Assembly: GCF_000143415.4 (NCBI RefSeq)
Contig: NW_003314372.1
Coordinates: 1-10,949, forward strand
Direction: 5' to 3'
Origin: Selaginella moellendorffii
Taxonomy: Eukaryota; Plantae; Lycopodiophyta
Length of the DNA stretch: 10,949 nucleotides
Positions 1-10,949 of the stretch are shown here, in pieces (the stretch's first letter is position 1; every line of letters begins with the position of its first letter). The notes below the pieces were generated by a model. The model did not search any database and had not been told where the DNA came from. It saw nothing but the letters and a program-made list of their open reading frames with translations. Both the position numbers and the translations under genes were made by a program.

Positions 1-24
1 GTTACTTCATTATTGAAGCGGAAG

Positions 25-1650
25 AACTTTGTTAATCGTATTGTTCAATGGGCTTTGAAGCTTTAGACATATGATTTTAATATTGTTCATCGCCCGGGGA
101 GTTCTATGGCTGATGCTAATGCCCTTTTTGGAGCTCCTCTTCCTTCTTCACTCTCTTCTCATGTTTTTGAAGAGCCTGTTGTTTTAGCATCTGTGGATTT
201 TCTAGATAAAGATTCTGTGCCTAGGGAGTTCTATGGCTGATGCTGATGCCCTTTCTCGAGCTCCTCTTCCTTCTCCACTCTCTTCTCATGTTTTTGACCA
301 GCCTGTTGTTTTAGTATCTGTGGATTTTCTTAATGAGGATTCTGTGCCATCGGTAGTTGTTGTACTTGATGTTCAATGTCCACAAGGCATAGAGCAAGAT
401 CTACCTTCTCTTGATGAGGTTTGCAAGGCTCAAAAGATTGAGCCATGGATTCAAAGGCTTCAAGATGGGTTTAAGAATTTTGTATCACTTACTAATGACT
501 TGCCATTCTGGCATTTGCATTCTCAATATCACCTTGAAGATAGCCTTCTTTATTTTGTGGGGATAGATCCTGATGATCATTTATGGCTGGTGGTGCCTTC
601 CATCTTTATTCCACGGTTTCTTCATACCTACCATGATTCTCCTATCCTAGGCGGGCATATGGGACATCGTCATATGACCAAGAAGCTGTGCAAGTCTTTC
701 TATTAGCTAGAGATGCAACATAATGTTATCCGGTATGTGCATAGCTATGTTTGGTGCCAAGCTCATAATACTCCCCTTCATTCTGCAAAAGGATAGTTAG
801 AGTCAATTGCAGTTTCCTGTCCATTTGAGTTAATGGCATTTAATCTTATAGGACCTTTTCCATGATTAACTACTGACAATGAATATGTTATTATTGCTTC
901 TAACTATTTGACTTGTTGGGTGGAAGTTGGTGCTCTTGCTAGCACCTATGCAATTACTGTTGGATACTTCTTCCTCAATCGAGTGGTGTTCTAGTATTCT
1001 TGTCTAGAGCAAATTCTTTCGGATAATGGTCCCGCATTTATGGCTGAAGCATTTCATGTTTTGACCTCTCGGTTGGGGATATACCACACTTTCATGAGTG
1101 TTTATTATCCATAGTCAGATAGTTTGGTGGAACGGCTCGTTTGGCATTCAAAGAAATGATCGCAAAGTATGTGAACTTTTAGCATTCGGATTGGAATGGT
1201 TATTTGCCATTTCTTCAATATGCATATATCACAAGGGTGCAAAGTTCTATTGGTGCTTCACCATATAAACTTTTATATAGTCATAATCTAATATTACTAA
1301 TGGAAATGGGTTTATCTTTGCGATTGCCACGAGCTATTGATGCTAGGTCGTGGGATCAGTATTTGATGAGCTTTCTTCCACTTATCCAAAAAGAGTTTGT
1401 TGAACACTTAAGCCAGATACAATTGGGACAATAACGGCATTACAACTCCCATCATCATTCACCTGCAGAGTACAAAGTGGATGACTTGGTGTTAGTCTAT
1501 TTTCCATATCTTATGGTACATGATTTATCTAAAGGGCTCCATGCTCAGTGGAAAGGACCATTGTGGCAAGTTGGATCACAAGTTTATAAGGTTGGACATG
1601 ACATCTAGCAAGCCGATCCTCCAGAAATTGTGCGTAGTGGTTGAAACACT
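25..1650 (+). mobile_element. Degenerate Ty3/gypsy LTR-retrotransposon pol remnant (RNase H C-terminus, integrase Zn-finger, integrase core, GPY/F tail)
   Basis: Manual translation gives RIVQWALKL*TYDFNIVHRPG..ADALSR (RNase H end), YHDSPILGGHMG..FY*..YVHSYVWCQ (HHCC-like), PFELMAFNLIGPFP, ILSDNGPAF, YP*SDSLVER, LPFLQYAY..SIGASPYKLLY and QWKGP. Many in-frame stops and frameshifts. Confidence 0.93.
97..350 (+). repeat. Imperfect 127-bp tandem duplication inside the pol remnant
   Basis: gggagttctatggctgatgct...gattctgtgcc occurs at 97-223 and again at 224-350 with scattered substitutions. Confidence 0.9.
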
Positions 1651-3366: not shown

Positions 3367-3751
3367 TGTGTATTATTTTGGAATGAAAGGACCTTCTAGA
3401 TGTATATAGTTATAGATGATGGATCATGAATTTGAGTAAAGTTCCCTAAAAAAGGTGATCATCAATATGACTTATCTTTAAGATAAAGACTTTGTTGGGG
3501 GAAGAATTTTTACATGGTCAATAGGTAAGATTAAGGCATGGTAGAGCTTTTGAGGTAACTTGGGGGTGCTTAAGTGGTAAAGAATTTCAAAATGTTACCC
3601 AAACAAGGTTAAACCTCTTTATATTTGTTATTTAGCTCCAAATCTTAACAATATATCCATCCCTCTCATGCTTCAGGGTGAGCATTGCAAAACTTTCAAA
3701 ATAGTATATAATCTTTAATATTTTCTTATTTGAGACATTTGATTTGAGATG

Positions 3752-4717
3752 TTAATACCAAACAAAGTGACACTCTAAGAGCCAGTGGCAGACTTCTCCC
3801 ACACCAAGGTTCATGTGTAGCACTTTGAATGAAATGTGGGATGGGTCAAAGCCTGAGGTGTCCAAGTGACAAACTGCAGGAACCTCCACAAGCTTGCTGC
3901 AAGATTGTGAATATGGTTTCAGTGTCACCATAAGCGAATTGTATGGCACATGTAGAGTGCATATGGAAATGTCATGGGATGACAAGCTAGAGTCCCATCT
4001 GTAGCAACCATAGCCTTTTCTACCACCTCAAATTCCCCTCCACATCGCTCACAGTGTTTATGACATGCTTCAAATCGGGCCTGCTGACTATTGAAGACGC
4101 TTGCTCCAGGATAGTCTTCACGGAGACATGGCACGCCTTGATCTCGTCCTTGATGCTGGCATCCATAGAACACATGCTCAAGCTGTCCCACATTGCCTTT
4201 GATACAGAAGACTGCATCAGGATTTGCATCGTTGGCAGCAGTCGTGAGAAACCATGGTTCCAAGAACTGGCTCAAGGAGTGAATGCATGAACATACTGGG
4301 AGGAATTGAGTTGTCCCAGAGGAGAGGCGGTGGCAGCCGACAAGCATGTTCATCTGGAAGAAAAGCTTGGGGGATCAAATTCCAAGGTTAGATTCCATTG
4401 CACTCCTGGCAAGGTGATGATGCTGGCGGTGATGATCAATGTGGTGGCACACAGGAAGCCGGCTTTTTTTGCACGACTCGAGTGACATGGTGCCGGAAGC
4501 ATGGATTTCCCGCTTGATGCGCATTTTGGAGGCATCATCCAAGGGCGACAGCCTCTCCAGTATTGAGCCAGGAAGGAGACACCCCTGCGTCAAAAACAAA
4601 AGTAAGAGTTGAGAATGAGCGAGAGCTCATGACTAAGAGGCTCTTGAAGCTGACCACATGATGCACGAGAGAAATCGCAAGCAAGATACGTAGCAAAACG
4701 TGACCGCCAATAGACAT
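3752..4717 (-). pseudogene. BURP-domain protein (stand-alone burpitide cyclase-like), secreted; frameshifted as assembled
   Basis: Exon 1 4717-4655 (MSIGGHVLLRILLAISLVHHV, signal-like), 70-bp intron 4654-4585 (GTCAGC...TTTTTGACGCAG), exon 2 4584-3752. Joined frames give LSPLDD..SCKKAGFLC, LPG..LTLEF..SFLPDEHA, AMWDSLSMC..IKDEIKAC, then ACH-PMTFPYALYM-CH..VEVPAVCH-LDTSGFDPSHISFKVLHMNLGVGEV-CH-WLLECHFV-W. This is the CHx10CHx~24CHx25CHx8W BURP signature. About five frame changes are needed (near 4467, 4362, 4350-4270, 4036, 3938). Confidence 0.93.
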
Positions 4718-4845
4718 GGAAATGATAAAGGCTTTTGCCTACGCCCGTTCATTTATTCAATTTCAAAATAAATGTAGTTTAATAAAGCAGAGTTTCGTTT
4801 AACAGCTTGTTAACAAGAGAAATAGAGATTCGGTAAACAATACAA

Positions 4846-5835
4846 TCAATACTTGAGCATGGACACAAGGATTTTGCGAGTAGGCTCGAGCTTGGAAGTG
4901 GAATGTCTAGAATGGAGCACATGAGAATTTTCCAGCATGAGCACGTCCCCTTGCTCCCACTGCACAGCAAATTGTTTCTCCTGCATGATTTCACAGGCGG
5001 CTTTGATAGCATCCGTGGGCATGGCTGTCTCGTCTCCAAACTCAACATATGGCTCGCTAGAATCACGGACGTAGCTTGATCCAATCGCATTAAACCATGC
5101 CTTCTTGCCGCTTGGAAGCTGCTTGATTGCTGGGCAAGGCCCAAGGTAGAGCTTCACGAGTCCATTCTCAAGCTGCTTTCTCTTGTACCCATTCATATTG
5201 CTGAAGGAAAGAAATCTCATATAACTATCCATTGAAGAAGAATGTGGTGTGGTACCTGCCATATTTTGGTTGCTCCGATGCTGGCACGGTGAAGCAATAT
5301 ATCGCTCCCTTGTCCTCCAAATCTTGAAGAAAGCTAGGGAATTTTTTGGACAAGTCCTCGTAGACATCATCCCCTCTCACAATGCCCGTCGCGCCACCAC
5401 ATCCTTGGGGCGGTGCAACCTCGCAGTAGAAAACAAGCACGTCGGGAATGACGGGCATCTGCAAGGAAAGCTTCACGACTGGCAAATTTCTCTACTGTCC
5501 AAGCTTACATAAGTAATTTCGTTGTGGAAGCCGATTGGAATCTCGAGAGGGAGGTCGTCATTTGCTGTGTAAACCGAGCCTTTGACGTGTTTCCGATCTT
5601 GGCTCCCAAAGTGATCATGCAAGATCTTGTAGTCCAGAGCTTTGATAACTTGATCAAAATCCGCTGCGTCTTTCACCGGAAATCCTCTTAAGAGCAATGC
5701 TCCATTGCGAGCGAGCTTGTCATGGATCCAGGCTTTGTGCTCCTGGACCTTGGATATGAAGTCATCCAGCGGCAACTCTCGTTCGTCTGGATTTGGCACC
5801 ACAACAGCAGGGAACTTACCAAACTGGTCCTCCAT
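4846..5835 (-). CDS. Clavaminate synthase-like / TauD-TfdA family Fe(II)/2-oxoglutarate dioxygenase (At3g21360-like), 3 exons, 294 aa from ATG 5835
   Basis: Exons 5835-5509, 5458-5256 and 5200-4846 splice in frame (885 nt). Introns are 5508-5459 (50 bp, GTAAGC..CCTTGCAG) and 5255-5201 (55 bp, GTACCA..CCTTCAG). Motifs: FPAVV, GALLLRGFPV, VYTAN, IGFHNE (HxE, 5526-5518), FYCEVAP..GG.T, WFN, FGD, WEQGDVLMLEN..VLHSR..R. The true start may be ATG 5894 if one A is missing from the A5 run at 5883-5879. Confidence 0.93.
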
Positions 5836-5861
5836 AAGTGCCGGCGGCGGATGCAAGCGAG

Positions 5862-5881
5862 AAACCCTAACGTTAGGGTTT
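5862..5881. promoter_or_regulatory. Perfect 20-bp palindrome made of two inverted telo-boxes
   Basis: AAACCCTAAC|GTTAGGGTTT. Each arm contains the plant telo-box AAACCCTAA and the centre is AACGTT. Regulatory function is inferred. Confidence 0.6.
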
Positions 5882-6036
5882 TTCCCGTCGCCATGGAGGA
5901 CTAATCGATTGTCAACTCATCAAATTATAATAAAATCATGTCAGAAACCATAAATATCTAGAAAATGTCATCTGAAGCATTCTAGAGCTATATGATTGAT
6001 GCAATACCTTTAAACCTAAAGCCAAGGTAACCAATC

Positions 6037-6046
6037 TATTTATATA
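6037..6046 (-). promoter_or_regulatory. Candidate TATA box for the dioxygenase
   Basis: TATATAAATA on the minus strand about 140 bp upstream of ATG 5894. Confidence 0.35.
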
Positions 6047-6420
6047 TTTTATAATATATGGACTCTGAGTTAGATGCTTTATTTTGTCCACTACTATGTG
6101 AGTTGTTCATATGTCAAGTTGGCACCATGATCCAATGCTAGTTGGTGTGTCATTATTCAACATGTGGTCATTATAGTGTGTCATTATTCATTCTGATACA
6201 GTGGGCCAGGCTCGAAGAAATATTGTCTTTTGATAGAACTTCACGACAAAATTGTTCATTTATCAATGAACAGTTTTCCTCTTTTCCAAAAAGAAAAATA
6301 AAATGAGCTGAATTAGAAGTTTCTTTGTAGTTCAGTAAACATATGCAAACCTAAAGTTGGCCATGAATTGACTTTTCACATGATATTTTACTCTGGTCTT
6401 TGCGCTTTCTGGCACCAACA

Positions 6421-6429
6421 CTATTTAAG
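6421..6429 (+). promoter_or_regulatory. Candidate TATA-like box for the precursor peptide gene
   Basis: CTATTTAAG about 40 bp upstream of ATG 6464, followed by an A/C-rich leader (atacaaaacactcATG). Confidence 0.35.
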
Positions 6430-6463
6430 AAAGTGGCTTCATATTGTAATATACAAAACACTC

Positions 6464-7113
6464 ATGCAATTTCATTTGTTCTAGTGTTGTTCTTCACTGT
6501 AAGTTTTACAGTTGCTCTAGATGCTCTTGACATTGTCTATTTCGTTTTTCAGGCGACTTTAGCTCTCCGAATCGAAATAGATGCTGTTGAACAATCAACA
6601 ACGAACCCAACATCTATTCTGAAGGAGGTTACAGAAACGAAGGCTAAAGAAGAGAACACAACTCCAGAACTCAAGCAATCAATCAATCCCGAAGCCCCGT
6701 TATTCTATGCCAAGCAAGCAGTGAATCCCGAAGCCCCCTTACTCTGTGCCAAGCAAGCAGTGAATCCCGAAAGCCTGTTTTTTTATGCCAAGCCAGCAAT
6801 GAATCCCAAGGTCCCCAAGCAAGCAGTGAATCCCGAAAGCCTGTTTTTTTATGCCAAGCCAGCAATGAATCCCACCCCAAGCAAGCAGTGAATCCCGAAG
6901 CCCCCTTATTCTATGCCAAGCAAGCAGTGAATCCCGAAGCCCCCTTACTCTATGCCAAGCAAGCAGTGAATCCCGAAAGCCTGTTTATCTATGCCAAGCC
7001 AGCACTGAATCCCAAGGTTCCCAAGCAAGCAGTGAATCCCGACAGCAATGAATCCTGAGGTCCCCAAACAAGCACTGAATCCTGAGGTCCTGCTTCTCTA
7101 TGCCAAGCAGTGA
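6464..7113 (+). CDS. Secreted multi-core repeat peptide: putative split burpitide (cyclopeptide alkaloid) precursor; frameshifted as assembled
   Basis: Exon 1 6464-6498 M(A)ISFVLVLFFT (ATG is 1 nt out of frame, ATGCA vs ATGGCA). A 54-bp phase-0 intron 6499-6552 (GTAAGT..TTTTTCAG) follows. Exon 2 gives ATLA-LRIEID.., an acidic leader, then repeats AVNPE-xxxxY-AKQ ending at TGA 7111-7113. It is interrupted by a 4-bp deletion at 6874/5 and an inferred 23-bp deletion at 7042/3. Confidence 0.85.
6673..7110 (+). repeat. Coding tandem repeat with 39-bp core-bearing units and 27-bp coreless units
   Basis: Constant AAGCAAGCAGTGAATCCCGAA flanks variable 15-bp cassettes at 6694, 6733, 6772, 6838, 6900, 6939, 6978 and 7087. 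Unit lengths are multiples of 3. Confidence 0.95.
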
Positions 7114-10100
7114 GTATGAATGTATGTGAAACTGGATTTCTTTTTCGTGTGTGTGTAACCACCAACGTCCTGAAGTTTCAAAATAAAAATGATATTATGA
7201 AATATTTCGAATGGGGTTGAGGCTGTCAACTTTATAAGACCAACTTTAGCAAACTCTAAATCCAGATGTATGATATATTAGTTAATTGTCGACAGTATGT
7301 AAGATGATATTTTTTGGTATCTTTTTGCTAAAGGAATCCCAATGGAAATGAAAATAGCATAACTTAAGCTGAAAGGCATGTAATTAAAGTGTGATGAGTC
7401 AAATAATGATGGAGGTGTGGAAGTATCAGTAATGAATTGTAAAACTTGACAATTATGAAACAACTAAGCAAAAGGTGTAACACAATTGATTGAATTAGTA
7501 AAAGTTAACTACCCAAGACTTTTTATTAGGATAAAAAAGTTAAATATATATCCCACGAGGGGATAAATTGTTTATGTTGTGATATAGTAAGTCAAATGTC
7601 ATAAAGGGAAATGCTCATTTTCAAAGATTTTCATTATTAGGACACCTAAACACTCTAAAACAACAAAAAGTGGTGTTTAGTGTTATAAGGGCATTAAATA
7701 ACGCCCAAGGGACTAAGTCCCTAACGAATAATGGATAAAAAGTGTTATTCAATATTTAAAGTTGCGGAGACAAGAAAAATCCATCTATCTGGACAAAGCC
7801 AAAAAAGATTTTGGCAAGGCTAGTGACAGGTATATAAAGATATGTAAGTAACAATGTTAATCCCAATGTGTGGGATTACAAGGTGAGCATATCCGAATTG
7901 AGGAACCACTTCCAAAGGTATCGCATAGGTTCATCCCTAAGAATACTTATTAAGGCATGATAGAAAGTGCAAAGTTATCCTCTTAGTCTAGAGGAGAATA
8001 ACTGAAAGAAATGTTTAAGACCAAAAACAAGTAGTAAAGGGATAAAATTGAACTATAGTAATCGAAAAATAACCGAGAGTGGTTATGCAAGTTGGGAGTG
8101 AAGAATTAAGTGGGTGCTCGAAAGTGTTGTTATTGTCAACCATAATGCCATGGAAAGTTTAAGATATGGAATTGTTCATGTTAAACTGTATAGCAATTAA
8201 AAAGCTTGCAAAAGGAGAGGCTTTAGGAAATTAAAGGACAGAGTCCCTTCAAAGTTCTCAAAGACAATTTTAGGTAGATTAGTACCTAAAAAGACAAATA
8301 TAAATAGTTCATAGAATGCAAGAAATCAAAGTGGTACAGTAGAAGTGTGGTTATTGAAGCTTGCCATGAGGTGAGGCTATAAGGTTGAGGAAATAGTTTT
8401 TGAGTGTTCAAAGAATGGCTTTGAATGAAACTCAATAGTTAAGGACTTTCATGCTTATGCATGAAACCATGTTACACTAATCAGATGGCTTGCTAAGCGA
8501 GATTAGCAAATCAGGGGAACAAAGACCCTAGTTGAAGGTGTTGACTTCAAAAGGGGTGGCCCATAGGGCCAAGTATAGACAAATCCATGCATGATCATAA
8601 ATTTGTTAAGTGAGAAGATTTGGTAGTTTAGAGGAAGTAAGTTCTTAAGTTGTGATCCATAAACCGTTTTAGGTATAAGTTGGTGCATCAATATAGGGAA
8701 TCATGCCAGGCATCATATGTGATGCCATTCGTAGATGCATATATGGAGGTTAAATTTGAGTCCCAACCCTATAGTGCTTGGGTTCGAGTCTTAAATCAAT
8801 AGGGCATAGTAATGGTTTGGAATATGAGGACACTTATTTTTCGGTGGTCATAGACTTTTAATAAAGAGACTAGTTTGGGCACACCGCCAAACAAGGGATG
8901 CCCCAAAGTTGTGATGCACAGTTAGATTGCTTAATGTGAAAGCTTAGCATATATAACTTAAACACCTTGATGCAAGTGGCACCAAGGACGTGGTGAATGA
9001 GATAGGGACATCTAGTCTTAGTTGTTATGGACCCTTGGTTGAAAGGGCTGGCTTGCGTGCACTGGCAAGTGTGAAGAATGCCCCCGAGGTCATAGTCAAC
9101 AAGTTAAAGGTCTGGAAGACCTAATGCCTATTAGTAAACCTGTTAAGGTGTCAAAGTTAAATCACTAGATTATCTTATGGCTAAACAAGGATAAAGTCCT
9201 TGTGAATTTTCTAGTTCAAAGTGTTGATTTGAACTATTGGTAATCGTATGGCTTGGTCAAAGTGACCAAGTGAGAAAGACACCTAAAGGAACTGAATTGT
9301 AACAATACAATAGTATGGTGAGTCCAAGAAAATAGTCCCTAAGAAAAAGACTTATGGGTAGGTCTCATGAATAGAGCCCAAATGTTAAAGATACCTATTA
9401 TGGGTAAACACCCTCTAGACTTGGCAAAGCAGAGCTTTTGCTATGAAATGAAAAAGATATCTCAAGGATGGAGGTAGTGATTTTATGTTGCATGGTGCAA
9501 CAATCAAAGGATAGGAGCAAAAGATTAGTGGCTGAGATTAGGCCATAGAAATCATTAGAAGGAATCTAAATAGAAAATTTAAGCAATGCTAATGAATTGT
9601 GGGAAAATAAATATGTTTCCAAGGATGAATTCCTAAATGCTCCAATTTGGCGAAGGTAAAAGCTTTAAAATATATGAAGTGGTAAAGTAGCTAAATGATA
9701 GGGCCATGGATAGGCCTAGTATGAGTTATGGATAAGTGGAACTTAGTGCTAACGGTGGCATAAAATGAAAGAGAAGATGATGATGGCCTCTAGTAAAGAA
9801 CTTCCTATAACCGGTGCAATACAAAGTGTCAGACACACATAGGAAATTGACTCGAGATGTCAATATTAAAGCTCTAGAGTGCAATGGTTATGTTAGTAGA
9901 AGCTGAGACTACTCTTGAATGACTAGTAAAATTGAAAACAAGTTTAGCATGAACTAAATAAACAAAAAAAAGGGGGGGAAGGACCACCATCAGTGGTCTA
10001 ATGAGTCTTTAAGTTGGAAAGACTATGCTCTTTAGAGGATAGACAAAGCATAGTGAGCCTTTGGTGTCAAACCATTGATAGATATTGGTTGGGTGCCAAA

Positions 10101-10423
10101 GATGAAAAGTGGTAATCCATGATAGGTTACTTTATAAAATGGTTTATCATTCAATGAGGATATTGAGCTTCATTTATAGGTGGTGGAATTATGAGACATA
10201 AATCCCTAATCCCCAAAGTAGAGCCGAAAGGGTGCCACATGGTGGTGGCCAACGCAGAAGCTAAACGAACGTAACATGTTTGGACTAAAAGCTTTGATTT
10301 GAAAAGTCGAAAGCAAGAGTGGAACTCCCAACAAAGGGCTTTAGGAATAAGCATGAACAAGCAATAAGTGAGTCTCTAGAAAGTGGACATAAAAGGACTA
10401 ACACATGACACGTGGAAGAGTTT

Positions 10424-10746
10424 GAGATGGAGTCTAAGATGGACCTAAGATGGACCCGAGATGGAGTCTAAGATGGACCCGAGATGGAGTCTGAGATGCA
10501 TCCGAGATGGACCCAAGATGGACCCGAAATGGAGTTCGAGATGGAGCCGGAGATGGACCCGAGATGAAGTCCAAGATGGAGTCTGAGTGGACCTGAGATG
10601 GAGTTTGAGATGGACTTGAGATGGAGTCTAAGATGGACCTGAGATGGAGTCCGAGATGGACTCGAGATGAACCCGTGATAGAGACCGAGACTAGAACTAA
10701 GACCGAGTTTGAGTCCAAGTTTGAGTCCGAGTCCGAGTCCAAATCT
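10424..10746 (+). repeat. Minisatellite of 11/12-bp units (RAGATGGACCY / GAGATGGAGTCY) grading into GAGTCC-like hexamers
   Basis: About 20 units over 10424-10675, then gagacc gagact agaact aagacc gagttt gagtcc aagttt gagtcc gagtcc gagtcc over 10681-10746. Confidence 0.9.
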
Positions 10747-10949
10747 ACAAGTTGTGGGGTGAAAGCCCAAAGTGATTGTCCCCTAGGGGGCCTGTAGAGG
10801 TTTCAAAAGTATAGTAGGCAGAATGTGAGGTTACACTCTAATGGAACTAATTTAGCTAGAAAAGGCTAGTGTGGCCCAAAAATGCTATACCCATGTGTTG
10901 GGTGATGATATAACCACTTGGGAGGTCAACGAGCCAGTTGCTTGACACT

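What the first reader, a model, noticed from the sequence alone, without database searches (positions are those of the whole stretch)
3752..7113. Compact three-gene split burpitide cluster: multi-core Tyr precursor + BURP cyclase + TauD-type 2OG dioxygenase
Seen: within 3.4 kb there is a secreted BURP gene with all four CH motifs and no core repeats of its own, a clavaminate-synthase-like dioxygenase 128 bp away, and a divergent secreted repeat peptide whose variable cassettes end in Tyr. Known: BURP domains are Cu-dependent peptide cyclases of plant RiPPs (lyciumins, moroidins, cyclopeptide alkaloids), in fused and split forms, and split precursors are often found next to BURP genes. The characterised Selaginella kraussiana enzyme for the selanines is a fused type. 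Inference: this is a physically clustered pathway for 14-membered cyclopeptide alkaloids that includes its own tailoring oxidase. I do not know of a described precursor-BURP locus with an embedded CAS-like/TauD enzyme, particularly in a probable lycophyte. ORF callers miss it because of short introns and indels.
Basis: partly seen in the sequence, partly recalled or inferred. Interest (0 to 1): 0.93.

Follow-up and report, generated by a model that had tools for sequence, protein, structure and literature searches.

The report
Decayed clubmoss cyclic-peptide gene cluster
This is a real three-gene neighbourhood in the spikemoss Selaginella moellendorffii (peptide cyclase, multi-core peptide precursor, iron/2-oxoglutarate oxygenase), but the cyclase and precursor are broken by frameshifts, so it is a relic of a cyclic-peptide pathway, not a working one.

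Summary
On the minus strand lie a BURP gene (3752-4717) and, 128 bp upstream, a TauD/clavaminate-synthase-like gene (4846-5835). A repeat-peptide gene with eight x-L/F-x-Y cassettes (6465-7113) is transcribed divergently from the TauD gene. The lycophyte guess was right: the window is colinear with S. moellendorffii scaffold GL377640.1 and about 99% identical across the genes.

The BURP gene has sensible short introns and all four CH motifs. However, a 1-nt frameshift directly after the second CH motif is shared with the reference copy, and each copy carries further private lesions. The precursor's ATG is out of frame with its signal-like peptide, and two repeat-unit deletions shift the frame, again in both copies.

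Only the TauD gene is intact (294 aa, introns at the same positions as in a paralogue). It is a long-branch, lineage-specific paralogue. Its link to the peptide pathway rests on adjacency alone. Seven other lycophyte CAS-like loci have no BURP or precursor neighbour, and I could not search other Selaginella genomes.

A 2026 preprint already shows a 2OG-dependent decarboxylase (ZjuDC) in cyclopeptide alkaloid biosynthesis. It is unlinked to its cyclase and probably belongs to a different 2OG subfamily.

The parts
3752..4717 (-). BURP-domain gene (split-type, no cores of its own), a pseudogene. Exon 1 is 4655-4717, intron 1 is 4585-4654 (70 nt), exon 2 is 4404-4584, intron 2 is 4354-4403 (50 nt), exon 3 is 3752-4353.
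   Evidence: Pfam PF03181. The spliced model is open for 114 codons and then needs three frame changes. It is not annotated as a gene at the homologous reference locus.
3938..3942 (-). 1-nt frameshift directly after the second CH motif. In the upstream frame it leads to a stop at 3925-3927, before CH3 and CH4. It is shared with the S. moellendorffii reference copy.
   Evidence: The sequence here is identical in window and L001. The Pfam profile coverage is contiguous across the break (46-153, then 149-215), so no sequence is missing and this is not an intron.
4253..4254 (-). Window-only 1-nt deletion in a G run (frameshift in BURP exon 3).
   Evidence: Alignment with L001; frames.
4038..4039 (-). 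Window-only 1-nt deletion in a G run (second private frameshift in BURP exon 3).
   Evidence: Alignment with L001; frames.
3785..3990 (-). The four Cys-His copper-site motifs: LACH 3979-3990, YMCH 3943-3954, AVCH 3866-3877, EVCH 3785-3796. The X8-W end (ECHFVWY) is at 3755-3775.
   Evidence: Coordinates; spacing read.
4718..4845 (-). 128-bp spacer between the TauD stop codon and the BURP ATG. It contains an AATAAA about 35 nt before the BURP ATG.
   Evidence: Sequence. There are 0 differences from L001 over the 128 nt.
4846..5835 (-). Intact TauD/TfdA-family, clavaminate-synthase-like Fe(II)/2OG oxygenase gene of 294 aa. Exons are 5509-5835, 5256-5458 and 4849-5200, with the stop at 4846-4848. 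Introns are 5459-5508 (50 nt) and 5201-5255 (55 nt). Metal ligands lie in FHNE (5518-5529) and VLHSRH (4903-4920).
   Evidence: The spliced translation matches SELMODRAFT_425605 (P0002) at 287 of 294 residues. Introns have the same positions and phases as in paralogue P0117. PF02668 scores 107.8 bits for P0002. PDB 1y0z matches at E=7e-44. The AlphaFold2 model has pLDDT 90.8 and TM 0.86 to 1y0z.
5836..6464 (.). Head-to-head intergenic region shared by the TauD and precursor genes. It is the most diverged part of the locus. A TATA-like CTATTTAAG lies at 6421-6429.
   Evidence: 5.8% substitutions and 7 indel events against L001; sequence.
6465..7113 (+). Multi-core repeat-peptide (precursor) gene, degraded. 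The ATG at 6465-6467 is out of frame by 1 nt with the signal-like AISFVLVLFFT (6469-6498). The intron is 6499-6552 (54 nt). The repeat array is 6672-7113.
   Evidence: Frames. TRF gives 39-, 66- and 206-nt periods. The only homologue is RefSeq LOC112341075 (P0001), at 79% identity. That model uses the same 54-nt intron and borrows an upstream ATG.
6697..7101 (+). Eight core cassettes: PLFY 6697-6708, PLLC 6736-6747, LFFY 6775-6786 and LFFY 6841-6852 (frame 0); PLFY 6903-6914, PLLY 6942-6953 and LFIY 6981-6992 (frame 2); LLLY 7090-7101 (frame 0).
6868..6891 (+). Shared frame-shifting deletion (about 4 nt missing compared with neighbouring repeat units), followed by a stop at 6889-6891. It cuts the frame-0 ORF after four cores.
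   Evidence: Identical in window and L001; frames.
7033..7045 (+). Shared deletion of most of one repeat cassette (about 23 nt). It returns the reading to frame 0 for the last core and the terminal stop at 7111-7113.

Best explanation
The window holds a lineage-specific, decaying split-type burpitide locus of Selaginella moellendorffii or a very close relative, probably the second haplotype of the reference.

Originally a secreted copper-dependent BURP cyclase would have cross-linked the C-terminal Tyr phenol to the beta-carbon of residue 2 in each x-L/F-x-Y core. The cores sit on a separately encoded, secreted multi-core precursor. Proteolysis would then release 14-membered, selanine-like cyclopeptides.

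In this genome the pathway is dead. The cyclase gene is truncated before CH3 and CH4 by a frameshift that is shared by both copies. The precursor has lost the frame of its start codon and is interrupted twice. Both genes keep collecting private lesions at the neutral rate.

The clavaminate-synthase-like Fe(II)/2OG oxygenase gene between them is intact and folds normally. Whether it ever acted on the peptides is not established. I put that at about one in three. If it did, the most plausible chemistry is hydroxylation or decarboxylation-assisted desaturation at the C-terminal Tyr.

Shown: gene identities, gene structures, lesions, species. Inferred: the ancestral cyclisation chemistry, secretion, and any role for the oxygenase.
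For: - Species and synteny: the window is colinear with GL377640.1 over its whole length and about 99% identical across the genes.
- BURP: PF03181 is matched and all four CH motifs have canonical spacing. The three-exon model with 70- and 50-nt introns is typical of this genome and is open for the first 114 codons.
- BURP lesions: the 1-nt frameshift after CH2 is identical in both copies. The window also has two private 1-nt deletions. L001 has a private TGA and a 5-nt deletion that removes the intron-2 donor site. No BURP gene is annotated at the reference locus.
- Neutral decay: BURP divergence between the copies is 1.46%. This equals the synonymous divergence of the TauD gene (pS 0.016) and the intron divergence, so BURP is drifting neutrally.
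- Precursor: eight cassettes resemble the SkrBURP cores VLFY, ILLY and FLLY and the ArbA LLLY core (PMC11253845, PMC12186524). The out-of-frame ATG and two frame-shifting deletions are shared; further private indels occur in L001.
- TauD: intact, with introns at homologous positions, the H-x-E...H triad and the Arg retained, and a confident fold.
- Published precedent: truncated, non-functional BURP copies occur inside characterised split clusters, for example ArbB1 (PMC12186524).
Against: - The two window-only deletions lie in G homopolymers and could be sequencing errors. That would leave only one BURP lesion, the shared one.
- The frame-0 precursor ORF still encodes four cores. RefSeq models a 146-aa product with a borrowed start and an internal hydrophobic stretch, so residual expression of a short precursor cannot be excluded.
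- I had no expression data.
- I found no close BURP homologue, so the subfamily and the N-terminal 45 profile positions are unresolved.
- I could not search other Selaginella genomes, so I do not know whether an intact version of this locus exists.
Confidence: 0.72

Rival explanations
1. One reading: a working, physically clustered three-gene pathway (precursor, cyclase, TauD-type tailoring oxidase) for 14-membered cyclopeptide alkaloids. On this reading the apparent indels are assembly errors.
For: All parts are present and tightly packed: a 128-bp spacer and a 629-bp head-to-head promoter region. The window-only BURP deletions are in G runs. The TauD gene is intact. TauD-fold enzymes such as IsnB and PvcB perform decarboxylation-assisted desaturation of N-substituted tyrosine, and they appear among the fold neighbours.
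Against: The BURP frameshift after CH2 and the precursor's start-frame loss and two deletions are identical in two separately assembled copies. The reference copy adds a nonsense codon and a lost splice donor. The reference annotation has no BURP gene at this locus.
Confidence: 0.06
2. The TauD gene is a bystander. It is an ordinary member of the expanded lycophyte CAS-like family that happens to lie between a dead BURP gene and its dead precursor, and it acts on an unrelated small molecule.
For: - S. moellendorffii has at least six CAS-like paralogue groups.
- Seven other CAS-like loci in two lycophytes have no BURP or precursor neighbour.
- Genes in this genome often lie 1-3 kb apart.
- Known Selaginella cyclopeptides (selanines) keep a C-terminal carboxylate and carry no extra oxidation (10.64898/2026.01.20.700549).
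- The characterised cyclopeptide alkaloid decarboxylase ZjuDC is unlinked to its cyclase (same paper).
Against: - It is the only CAS-like paralogue next to a BURP gene.
- It is the fastest-evolving one: stem 1.07 substitutions per site against 0.2-0.6 for its paralogues.
- It has lost a near-invariant GRGW segment.
- Omega between the two copies is about 0.64 (7 nonsynonymous to 3 synonymous; omega of 0.1 is rejected at p about 0.005). This fits a gene orphaned when its partners died.
- It shares a promoter region with the precursor.
Confidence: 0.55
3. The BURP gene and the repeat protein never made a RiPP. On this reading the BURP gene was a non-catalytic stress or cell-wall type BURP protein, the repeat gene encoded a secreted structural repeat protein, and their adjacency is coincidental.
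For: The precursor does not match PF10950/DUF2775, the family of angiosperm split precursors. The angiosperm recognition feature, a Phe at -7 flanked by charged residues (PMC12186524), is not evident in the QAVNPE[A/S] spacer.
Against: The variable 4-residue cassettes sit in invariant flanks, and 7 of 8 end in Tyr with Leu or Phe at position 2. These are the residues cross-linked in selanines and in the arabipeptin-type LLLY core (PMC11253845, PMC12186524). All four copper-binding CH motifs are retained.
Confidence: 0.08

Closest known systems
SkrBURP / selanines (Selaginella kraussiana fused burpitide cyclase; PMC11253845, 10.64898/2026.01.20.700549)
   Same: Same genus. Both have a BURP domain with four CH motifs. 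The cores are of the same type (SkrBURP: VLFY-PSY, ILLY-PSY, FLLY-PY; here PLFY, PLLY, LFFY, LFIY, LLLY). These imply a Tyr-O to residue-2 C-beta ether link and a 14-membered ring.
   Different: SkrBURP is fused: 525 aa with eight cores in its own N-terminal domain. Here the cores are on a separate, divergently transcribed gene and the BURP gene (about 283 codons) has none. Here both genes are broken. The cores here lack the PSY extension needed for the second ring. I could not compare sequences directly because I had no SkrBURP sequence.
Angiosperm split burpitide loci: ArbA2/ArbB2 (Coffea arabica), ZjuPrec-FPIY/ZjuBURP (Ziziphus jujuba), CamB1 (Ceanothus) (PMC12186524, 10.64898/2026.01.20.700549)
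   Same: A separate secreted multi-core precursor lies next to a roughly 280-290-aa BURP gene without cores. The cores are 4-5 residues ending in Tyr, and an LLLY core occurs in Coffea. Dead BURP copies occur in such clusters (ArbB1).
   Different: - The precursor here has no PF10950/DUF2775 match.
- Its repeat units are much shorter (13 or 22 aa).
- It lacks the Phe(-7) recognition feature.
- Those three points suggest an independent origin of the split layout.
- It comes from a lycophyte, not a seed plant.
- A CAS-like gene is embedded.
- The cyclase and precursor are pseudogenes.
ZjuDC, the Fe(II)/2OG-dependent oxidative decarboxylase of cyclopeptide alkaloids (10.64898/2026.01.20.700549)
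   Same: It is a non-haem Fe/2OG enzyme acting on cyclised x-L/P-x-Y peptides.
   Different: ZjuDC is on chromosome 1, unlinked to ZjuBURP and its precursor on chromosome 9. The paper compares it with GA2ox/DAO-type plant dioxygenase structures, so it is probably DOXC-type (PF03171) rather than TauD-type (PF02668). That is my inference; I had no ZjuDC sequence to test.
At3g21360 clavaminate-synthase-like family, and bacterial sulfoquinovose dioxygenase SqoD (PDB 1y0z; 9yut; PMC12951627)
   Same: Best sequence and fold match: 1y0z at E=7e-44 and TM 0.86; 9yut at E=4e-30. The H-x-E...H triad and the Arg are the same.
   Different: The sulfoquinovose-binding Gln120 is Tyr here, and the loop carrying Trp253 is deleted. 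The near-invariant GRGW segment is missing. The gene sits on a long branch inside a lycophyte/fern clade. It is therefore not a sulfoquinovose dioxygenase by these residues.
IsnB / PvcB (TauD-fold enzymes that convert tyrosine isonitrile to a vinyl isonitrile by oxidative decarboxylation)
   Same: They have the same fold (Foldseek E about 1e-12 to 1e-11). Their chemistry is analogous to converting a C-terminal Tyr into a hydroxystyrylamine.
   Different: Only 14-17% identity and TM about 0.55, no closer than many other TauD-family members. This shows that such chemistry is possible on this fold. It is not evidence that this enzyme performs it.

Membership tests
BURP domain / burpitide cyclase | Match to Pfam PF03181 above the gathering score | tested here: met
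   55.1 and 27.3 bits for window ORFs; 60.9 and 53.1 bits for the reference copy, against a cut-off of 27. Profile positions 1-45 were not detected.
BURP domain / burpitide cyclase | CH-X10-CH-X23-27-CH-X23-26-CH-X8-W copper-site motif | tested here: met
   LACH-X10-YMCH-X~24-AVCH-X25-EVCH-X8-W. The second spacer is read across the frameshift.
BURP domain / burpitide cyclase | Uninterrupted coding sequence | tested here: not met
   Three frameshifts in the window, one of them shared with the reference. The reference has an extra TGA and a lost splice donor.
BURP domain / burpitide cyclase | Copper- and O2-dependent cross-linking activity | not testable with these tools
   Needs biochemistry.
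Split burpitide precursor (ST protein, PF10950/DUF2775) | Match to PF10950 | tested here: not met
   No hit at E<=1 for either window ORF or for P0001.
Split burpitide precursor (functional definition) | Signal peptide followed by repeated recognition-plus-core units ending in an aromatic residue, encoded next to a BURP gene | tested here: inconclusive
   The repeats, the cores and the adjacency are present. However, the ATG is out of frame with the signal-like peptide and the array is interrupted twice. I had no signal-peptide predictor.
Split burpitide precursor (functional definition) | Hydrophobic residue flanked by charged residues about 7 positions before the core (PMC12186524) | tested here: not met
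   The spacer is K-Q-A-V-N-P-E-[A/S]. The Val at -5 is not flanked by charged residues.
TauD/TfdA Fe(II)/2OG oxygenases, CAS-like At3g21360 group | PF02668 match, 2-His-1-carboxylate triad and 2OG-binding Arg | tested here: met
   107.8 bits for P0002. H and E of FHNE, H of VLHSRH, and R275/R285 align with near-invariant columns. The window protein differs from P0002 at 7 of 294 residues, none of them among these.
TauD/TfdA Fe(II)/2OG oxygenases, CAS-like At3g21360 group | Double-stranded beta-helix fold like 1y0z | tested here: met
   AlphaFold2 pLDDT 90.8; Foldseek 1y0z E=1.6e-30, TM 0.86. This was done on P0002, which is 98% identical to the window protein.
Sulfoquinovose dioxygenase (SqoD) | Sulfoquinovose-binding Gln120 and Trp253 | tested here: not met
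   Gln120 is replaced by Tyr, and the Trp253 loop is deleted.
ZjuDC-type cyclopeptide alkaloid oxidative decarboxylase | Sequence homology to ZjuDC (XM_048464910.1) | not tested
   No ZjuDC sequence was available in the tools. The literature context suggests a different 2OG subfamily.
Plant biosynthetic gene cluster | Conserved co-localisation in other genomes, and co-expression | not testable with these tools
   Only the S. moellendorffii reference locus could be fetched. I had no plant-genome search and no RNA-seq. Seven other CAS-like loci lack BURP and precursor genes.

The most novel reading that the evidence does not exclude
The locus is the fossil of a lycophyte-specific split burpitide cluster that arose independently of the angiosperm ST/DUF2775 systems. 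In this reading it had recruited a clavaminate-synthase-like (TauD-fold) Fe/2OG enzyme as a dedicated peptide-tailoring oxidase, for example an IsnB-like decarboxylative desaturase or a beta-hydroxylase acting on the C-terminal Tyr. Intact versions would then survive in other Selaginella species. That would add a second, unrelated 2OG enzyme family to cyclopeptide alkaloid tailoring. It would also be the first burpitide cluster with its tailoring enzyme physically linked.
Probability: 0.25. Interest if true: 0.8.

Novelty: new variant of a known kind. Interest (0 to 1): 0.45.

Why it matters
Burpitide cyclases and their precursors are being mined for drug-like cyclopeptide alkaloids. The only characterised lycophyte system, SkrBURP, is fused.

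This locus shows that a split layout also existed in Selaginella. Its precursor is unrelated to the angiosperm ST/DUF2775 family, which bears on how often the split and fused architectures arose.

The locus also points to one fast-evolving CAS-like oxygenase as a cheap candidate to test on cyclised xLxY peptides. The N. benthamiana SkrBURP platform for that test already exists.

For annotators, it is a worked example of a cluster-like neighbourhood that is largely pseudogenised. Automated BGC calls or hand 'repair' of the genes would over-interpret it.

Tried and rejected
1. A 32-nt GT..AG 'intron' (about 3896-3927) would restore the BURP frame after CH2. I rejected it for three reasons. It is far below the 50-70 nt of the real introns here. 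It would cut the CH2-CH3 spacer to 13 residues. The 'intronic' codons match the BURP profile.

2. I looked for alternative splice donors that would rescue the precursor ATG at 6465. None gives an open frame (sequence).

3. I considered that TauD 'intron 2' might be a disguised lesion, because the unspliced reading GRYHTTFFF recalls the family's GRGWxSTF. I rejected this because the intron has the same position and phase as in paralogue P0117 and a strong polypyrimidine/CAG acceptor.

4. I considered reading the high identity of the gene block (98-100%, against 88-90% in the flanks) as purifying selection on BURP. I rejected this because synonymous sites, introns and the 128-bp spacer are equally or more conserved. 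The block simply coalesced recently, or was homogenised.

5. I considered assigning the TauD gene as a sulfoquinovose dioxygenase. I rejected this on the substrate-binding residues.

6. These searches found nothing:
- A word-index search with the 123-aa BURP piece.
- Exact look-ups of ten ORFs.
- A PDB search with the middle BURP piece; AhyBURP matches the C-terminal piece only at E=0.026.
- Rfam on the window.
- Pfam on nine flank ORFs.

7. The length filter of the homologue search meant that fused BURP proteins such as SkrBURP could not be retrieved. The BURP subfamily is therefore undetermined.

Full report
**What is in the window.** The sequence is about 40% G+C and eukaryotic in character. 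Pfam places BURP (PF03181) matches on two minus-strand ORFs between 3752 and 4353. It places TauD/TfdA (PF02668) matches on three minus-strand ORFs between 4846 and 5856. On the plus strand, 6400-7113 holds a tandem array with 39-nt and 66-nt units nested in a 206-nt higher-order repeat. The array encodes NPE[A/S/V]-core-AK cassettes. The cores are PLFY, PLLC, LFFY, LFFY, PLFY, PLLY, LFIY and LLLY. The TauD stop (4846-4848) is 128 bp from the BURP ATG (4715-4717). The TauD ATG (5833-5835) and the precursor ATG (6465-6467) are head to head, 629 bp apart.

**Where it comes from.** A protein search with the precursor ORF returned a single hit: 'uncharacterized protein LOC112341075' of Selaginella moellendorffii, at 79% identity (P0001). 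Its locus is GL377640.1:577,613-598,652 (L001). There the gene lies next to an annotated 294-aa TauD gene, SELMODRAFT_425605 (P0002). The window is colinear with L001 over its full length. Identity is 98-100% from 3500 to 5835, about 98% across the precursor, 94% in the TauD-precursor spacer and 88-90% in the flanks. The reference assembly carries both haplotypes; other CAS-like genes appear as near-identical pairs on two scaffolds. The window is therefore most simply the second haplotype or a very close relative.

**The TauD gene is intact.** Splicing 5509-5835, 5256-5458 and 4849-5200 across 50- and 55-nt GT..AG introns gives a 294-aa product. It is identical to P0002 at 287 positions. Both introns have the same position and phase as in the S. 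moellendorffii paralogue P0117: after FHNE(I/M)(T/A)Y, and within the codon that precedes the conserved C-terminal exon. The metal ligands (H and E of FHNE, H of VLHSRH) and the conserved Arg residues are present. An AlphaFold2 model of P0002 is confident (pLDDT 90.8). It superposes on Arabidopsis At3g21360 (1y0z) with TM 0.86.

**The TauD gene is an outlier in its family.**
- Its nearest relatives anywhere in 1.8 billion representative proteins are S. moellendorffii paralogues at 36-44% identity.
- In a tree it sits inside a lycophyte/fern CAS-like clade on a stem of 1.07 substitutions per site. Its paralogues have stems of 0.2-0.6.
- It has lost a segment carrying a near-invariant GRGW motif.
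- The best-characterised relative of the At3g21360 family is bacterial sulfoquinovose dioxygenase (PMC12951627). Its sulfoquinovose-binding Gln120 is Tyr here, and the Trp253 loop is deleted. That function can be set aside.
- Between window and reference there are 7 nonsynonymous and 3 synonymous differences, giving omega of about 0.64. Omega of 0.1 is rejected at p about 0.005, omega of 0.15 at p about 0.03, and neutrality is not rejected.

**The BURP gene is broken.**
- A three-exon model is open for 114 codons. It runs: exon 1 4655-4717, a 70-nt intron, exon 2 4404-4584, a 50-nt intron, exon 3 from 4353. The product starts MSIGGHVLLRILLAISLVHHV|GCLLPGS... and includes a His-rich stretch.
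- Exon 3 then needs three frame changes. These are 1-nt deletions in G runs at 4253/4254 and 4038/4039, and a 1-nt shift at 3938-3942 directly after the second CH motif.
- The first two are absent from L001. The third is identical in L001.
- In L001 the Pfam match runs over profile positions 46-153 in one frame and 149-215 in the next. Nothing is missing at the junction, so it is a frameshift and not an intron. In the upstream frame a stop follows at 3925-3927, before CH3 and CH4.
- L001 has its own lesions: a TGA where the window has the Trp codon of PPLLWDNS, and a 5-nt deletion that removes the intron-2 donor site.
- No BURP gene is annotated at the reference locus.
- BURP divergence between the copies is 1.46%. 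TauD synonymous divergence is 1.6% and the TauD introns differ at 1 of 105 nt. BURP is therefore drifting at the neutral rate.
- Read across the breaks, the product would be about 283 aa, with no cores of its own. It would have a canonical CH-X10-CH-X~24-CH-X25-CH-X8-W motif. That is the size and layout of split cyclases such as ArbB2 and ArbB3 (PMC12186524).

**The precursor is also degraded.**
- A TATA-like box (6421-6429) precedes the ATG at 6465.
- That ATG opens a seven-codon frame. The signal-like AISFVLVLFFT that follows is one nucleotide out of register.
- A 54-nt intron (6499-6552) is also used by the RefSeq model. That model has to borrow an ATG lying antisense in the TauD 5' region.
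- Compared with neighbouring repeat units, about 4 nt are missing near 6868. This puts a stop at 6889-6891 after four cores. About 23 nt are missing near 7036, which brings the last core (LLLY) back into the original frame.
- The start-frame defect and both deletions are shared with L001. L001 adds private indels and one extra repeat, and the window has a Tyr-to-Cys change in one core.
- The precursor has no PF10950/DUF2775 match.
- It also lacks the Phe(-7) recognition feature of angiosperm split precursors (PMC12186524).
- Its cores closely resemble the S. kraussiana selanine cores VLFY, ILLY and FLLY (PMC11253845) and the Coffea LLLY core (PMC12186524).

**Is the TauD gene part of the pathway?** The evidence in favour is circumstantial:
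- its position between the two genes;
- the promoter region it shares with the precursor;
- its being the only CAS-like gene next to a BURP gene;
- its long branch and its relaxed constraint.

The evidence against is as follows. Seven other CAS-like loci (four in S. moellendorffii, three in Diphasiastrum) have neither an annotated nor a cryptic BURP or precursor sequence. Genes in this genome are often 1-3 kb apart. Known selanines carry no modification that would need such an enzyme. I found no paper connecting TauD/CAS-like enzymes with BURP loci. Fold neighbours include IsnB and PvcB, TauD-fold enzymes that oxidatively decarboxylate tyrosine isonitrile.

**Comparison with what is known.**
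- Split BURP-plus-precursor loci are well described in angiosperms and are now catalogued by the thousand (plantiSMASH 2.0).
- The characterised Selaginella system is fused.
- A January 2026 preprint established a Fe/2OG-dependent oxidative decarboxylase (ZjuDC) and an N-methyltransferase for jujube cyclopeptide alkaloids. It states that the pathway is not fully clustered: ZjuDC is on chromosome 1 and the cyclase and precursor are on chromosome 9.
- ZjuDC is compared there with GA2ox/DAO-type structures. It is therefore probably a DOXC-type enzyme rather than TauD-type. That is my inference; I had no ZjuDC sequence.

**Verdict.** The locus is a new variant of a known kind. It is a lycophyte split-type burpitide locus with an unrelated precursor family and an embedded CAS-like oxygenase, preserved only as a relic. 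It is worth a specialist's follow-up in other Selaginella genomes and a quick enzyme test.

**Limits.** I had no tool to search plant genomes or RNA-seq. I retrieved no close BURP homologue, so the subfamily is unknown. Secretion signals were judged by eye. The selection test rests on ten substitutions.

Noticed in passing
window 1-1445 (ORFs 106-240, 233-706, 1204-1434): Degenerate LTR-retrotransposon pol fragment: Integrase_H2C2 at E=2.7e-4, just below the Pfam cut-off. A short N-terminal segment is duplicated: MADA(N/D)AL... occurs twice, and window 199-348 also aligns to L001 4933-5083. It is colinear with L001 4873-6306 at 89% identity.
   Followed up: partly
window 3500-5835 versus flanks; L001 7016-11699: Divergence from the reference copy is very uneven. 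It is 0-1.5% across BURP, the spacer and TauD, including introns and synonymous sites. It is 5.8% in the TauD-precursor spacer, 15% just upstream of the TauD ATG and about 11% in the flanks. This suggests recent gene conversion or a younger coalescence of the gene block, rather than selection. It remains unexplained.
   Followed up: partly
L001 11699-17650 versus window 7494-7647: The reference copy has about 6 kb that the window lacks. Part of it is a 74-77% identical duplicate of the downstream flank (window 7325-9664 and 9678-10731).
   Followed up: no
window 10434-10797, both strands: Low-complexity repeat region giving long ORFs rich in Ser, Gly, Pro and Leu (for example ...SISGPS...). 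No Pfam match.
   Followed up: partly
window 5855-5890 (+) / L001 about 9995-10030: The first exon of the RefSeq model LOC112341075 (P0001; MQARNPNVRVFP) lies antisense in the 5' region of the TauD gene and is joined over an intron of about 540 nt. It looks like a predictor's workaround for the out-of-frame native ATG.
   Followed up: partly
P0003 (SELMODRAFT_449058) versus P0117: P0003 is nearly identical to P0117 but lacks the segment that contains the FHNE metal-binding motif. It is probably an older mis-modelled version of the same gene.
   Followed up: no
L005 10001-12345 (S. moellendorffii GL377566.1): Two CAS-like TauD genes (323 and 326 aa) lie tail to tail, 117 bp apart. This shows local duplication in this expanded family.
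   Followed up: no
window 6672-7046: The 206-nt higher-order repeat (1.8 copies, 94% match) is not a multiple of three. The second half of the core array sits in a different frame from the first, consistent with this unit length.
   Followed up: partly
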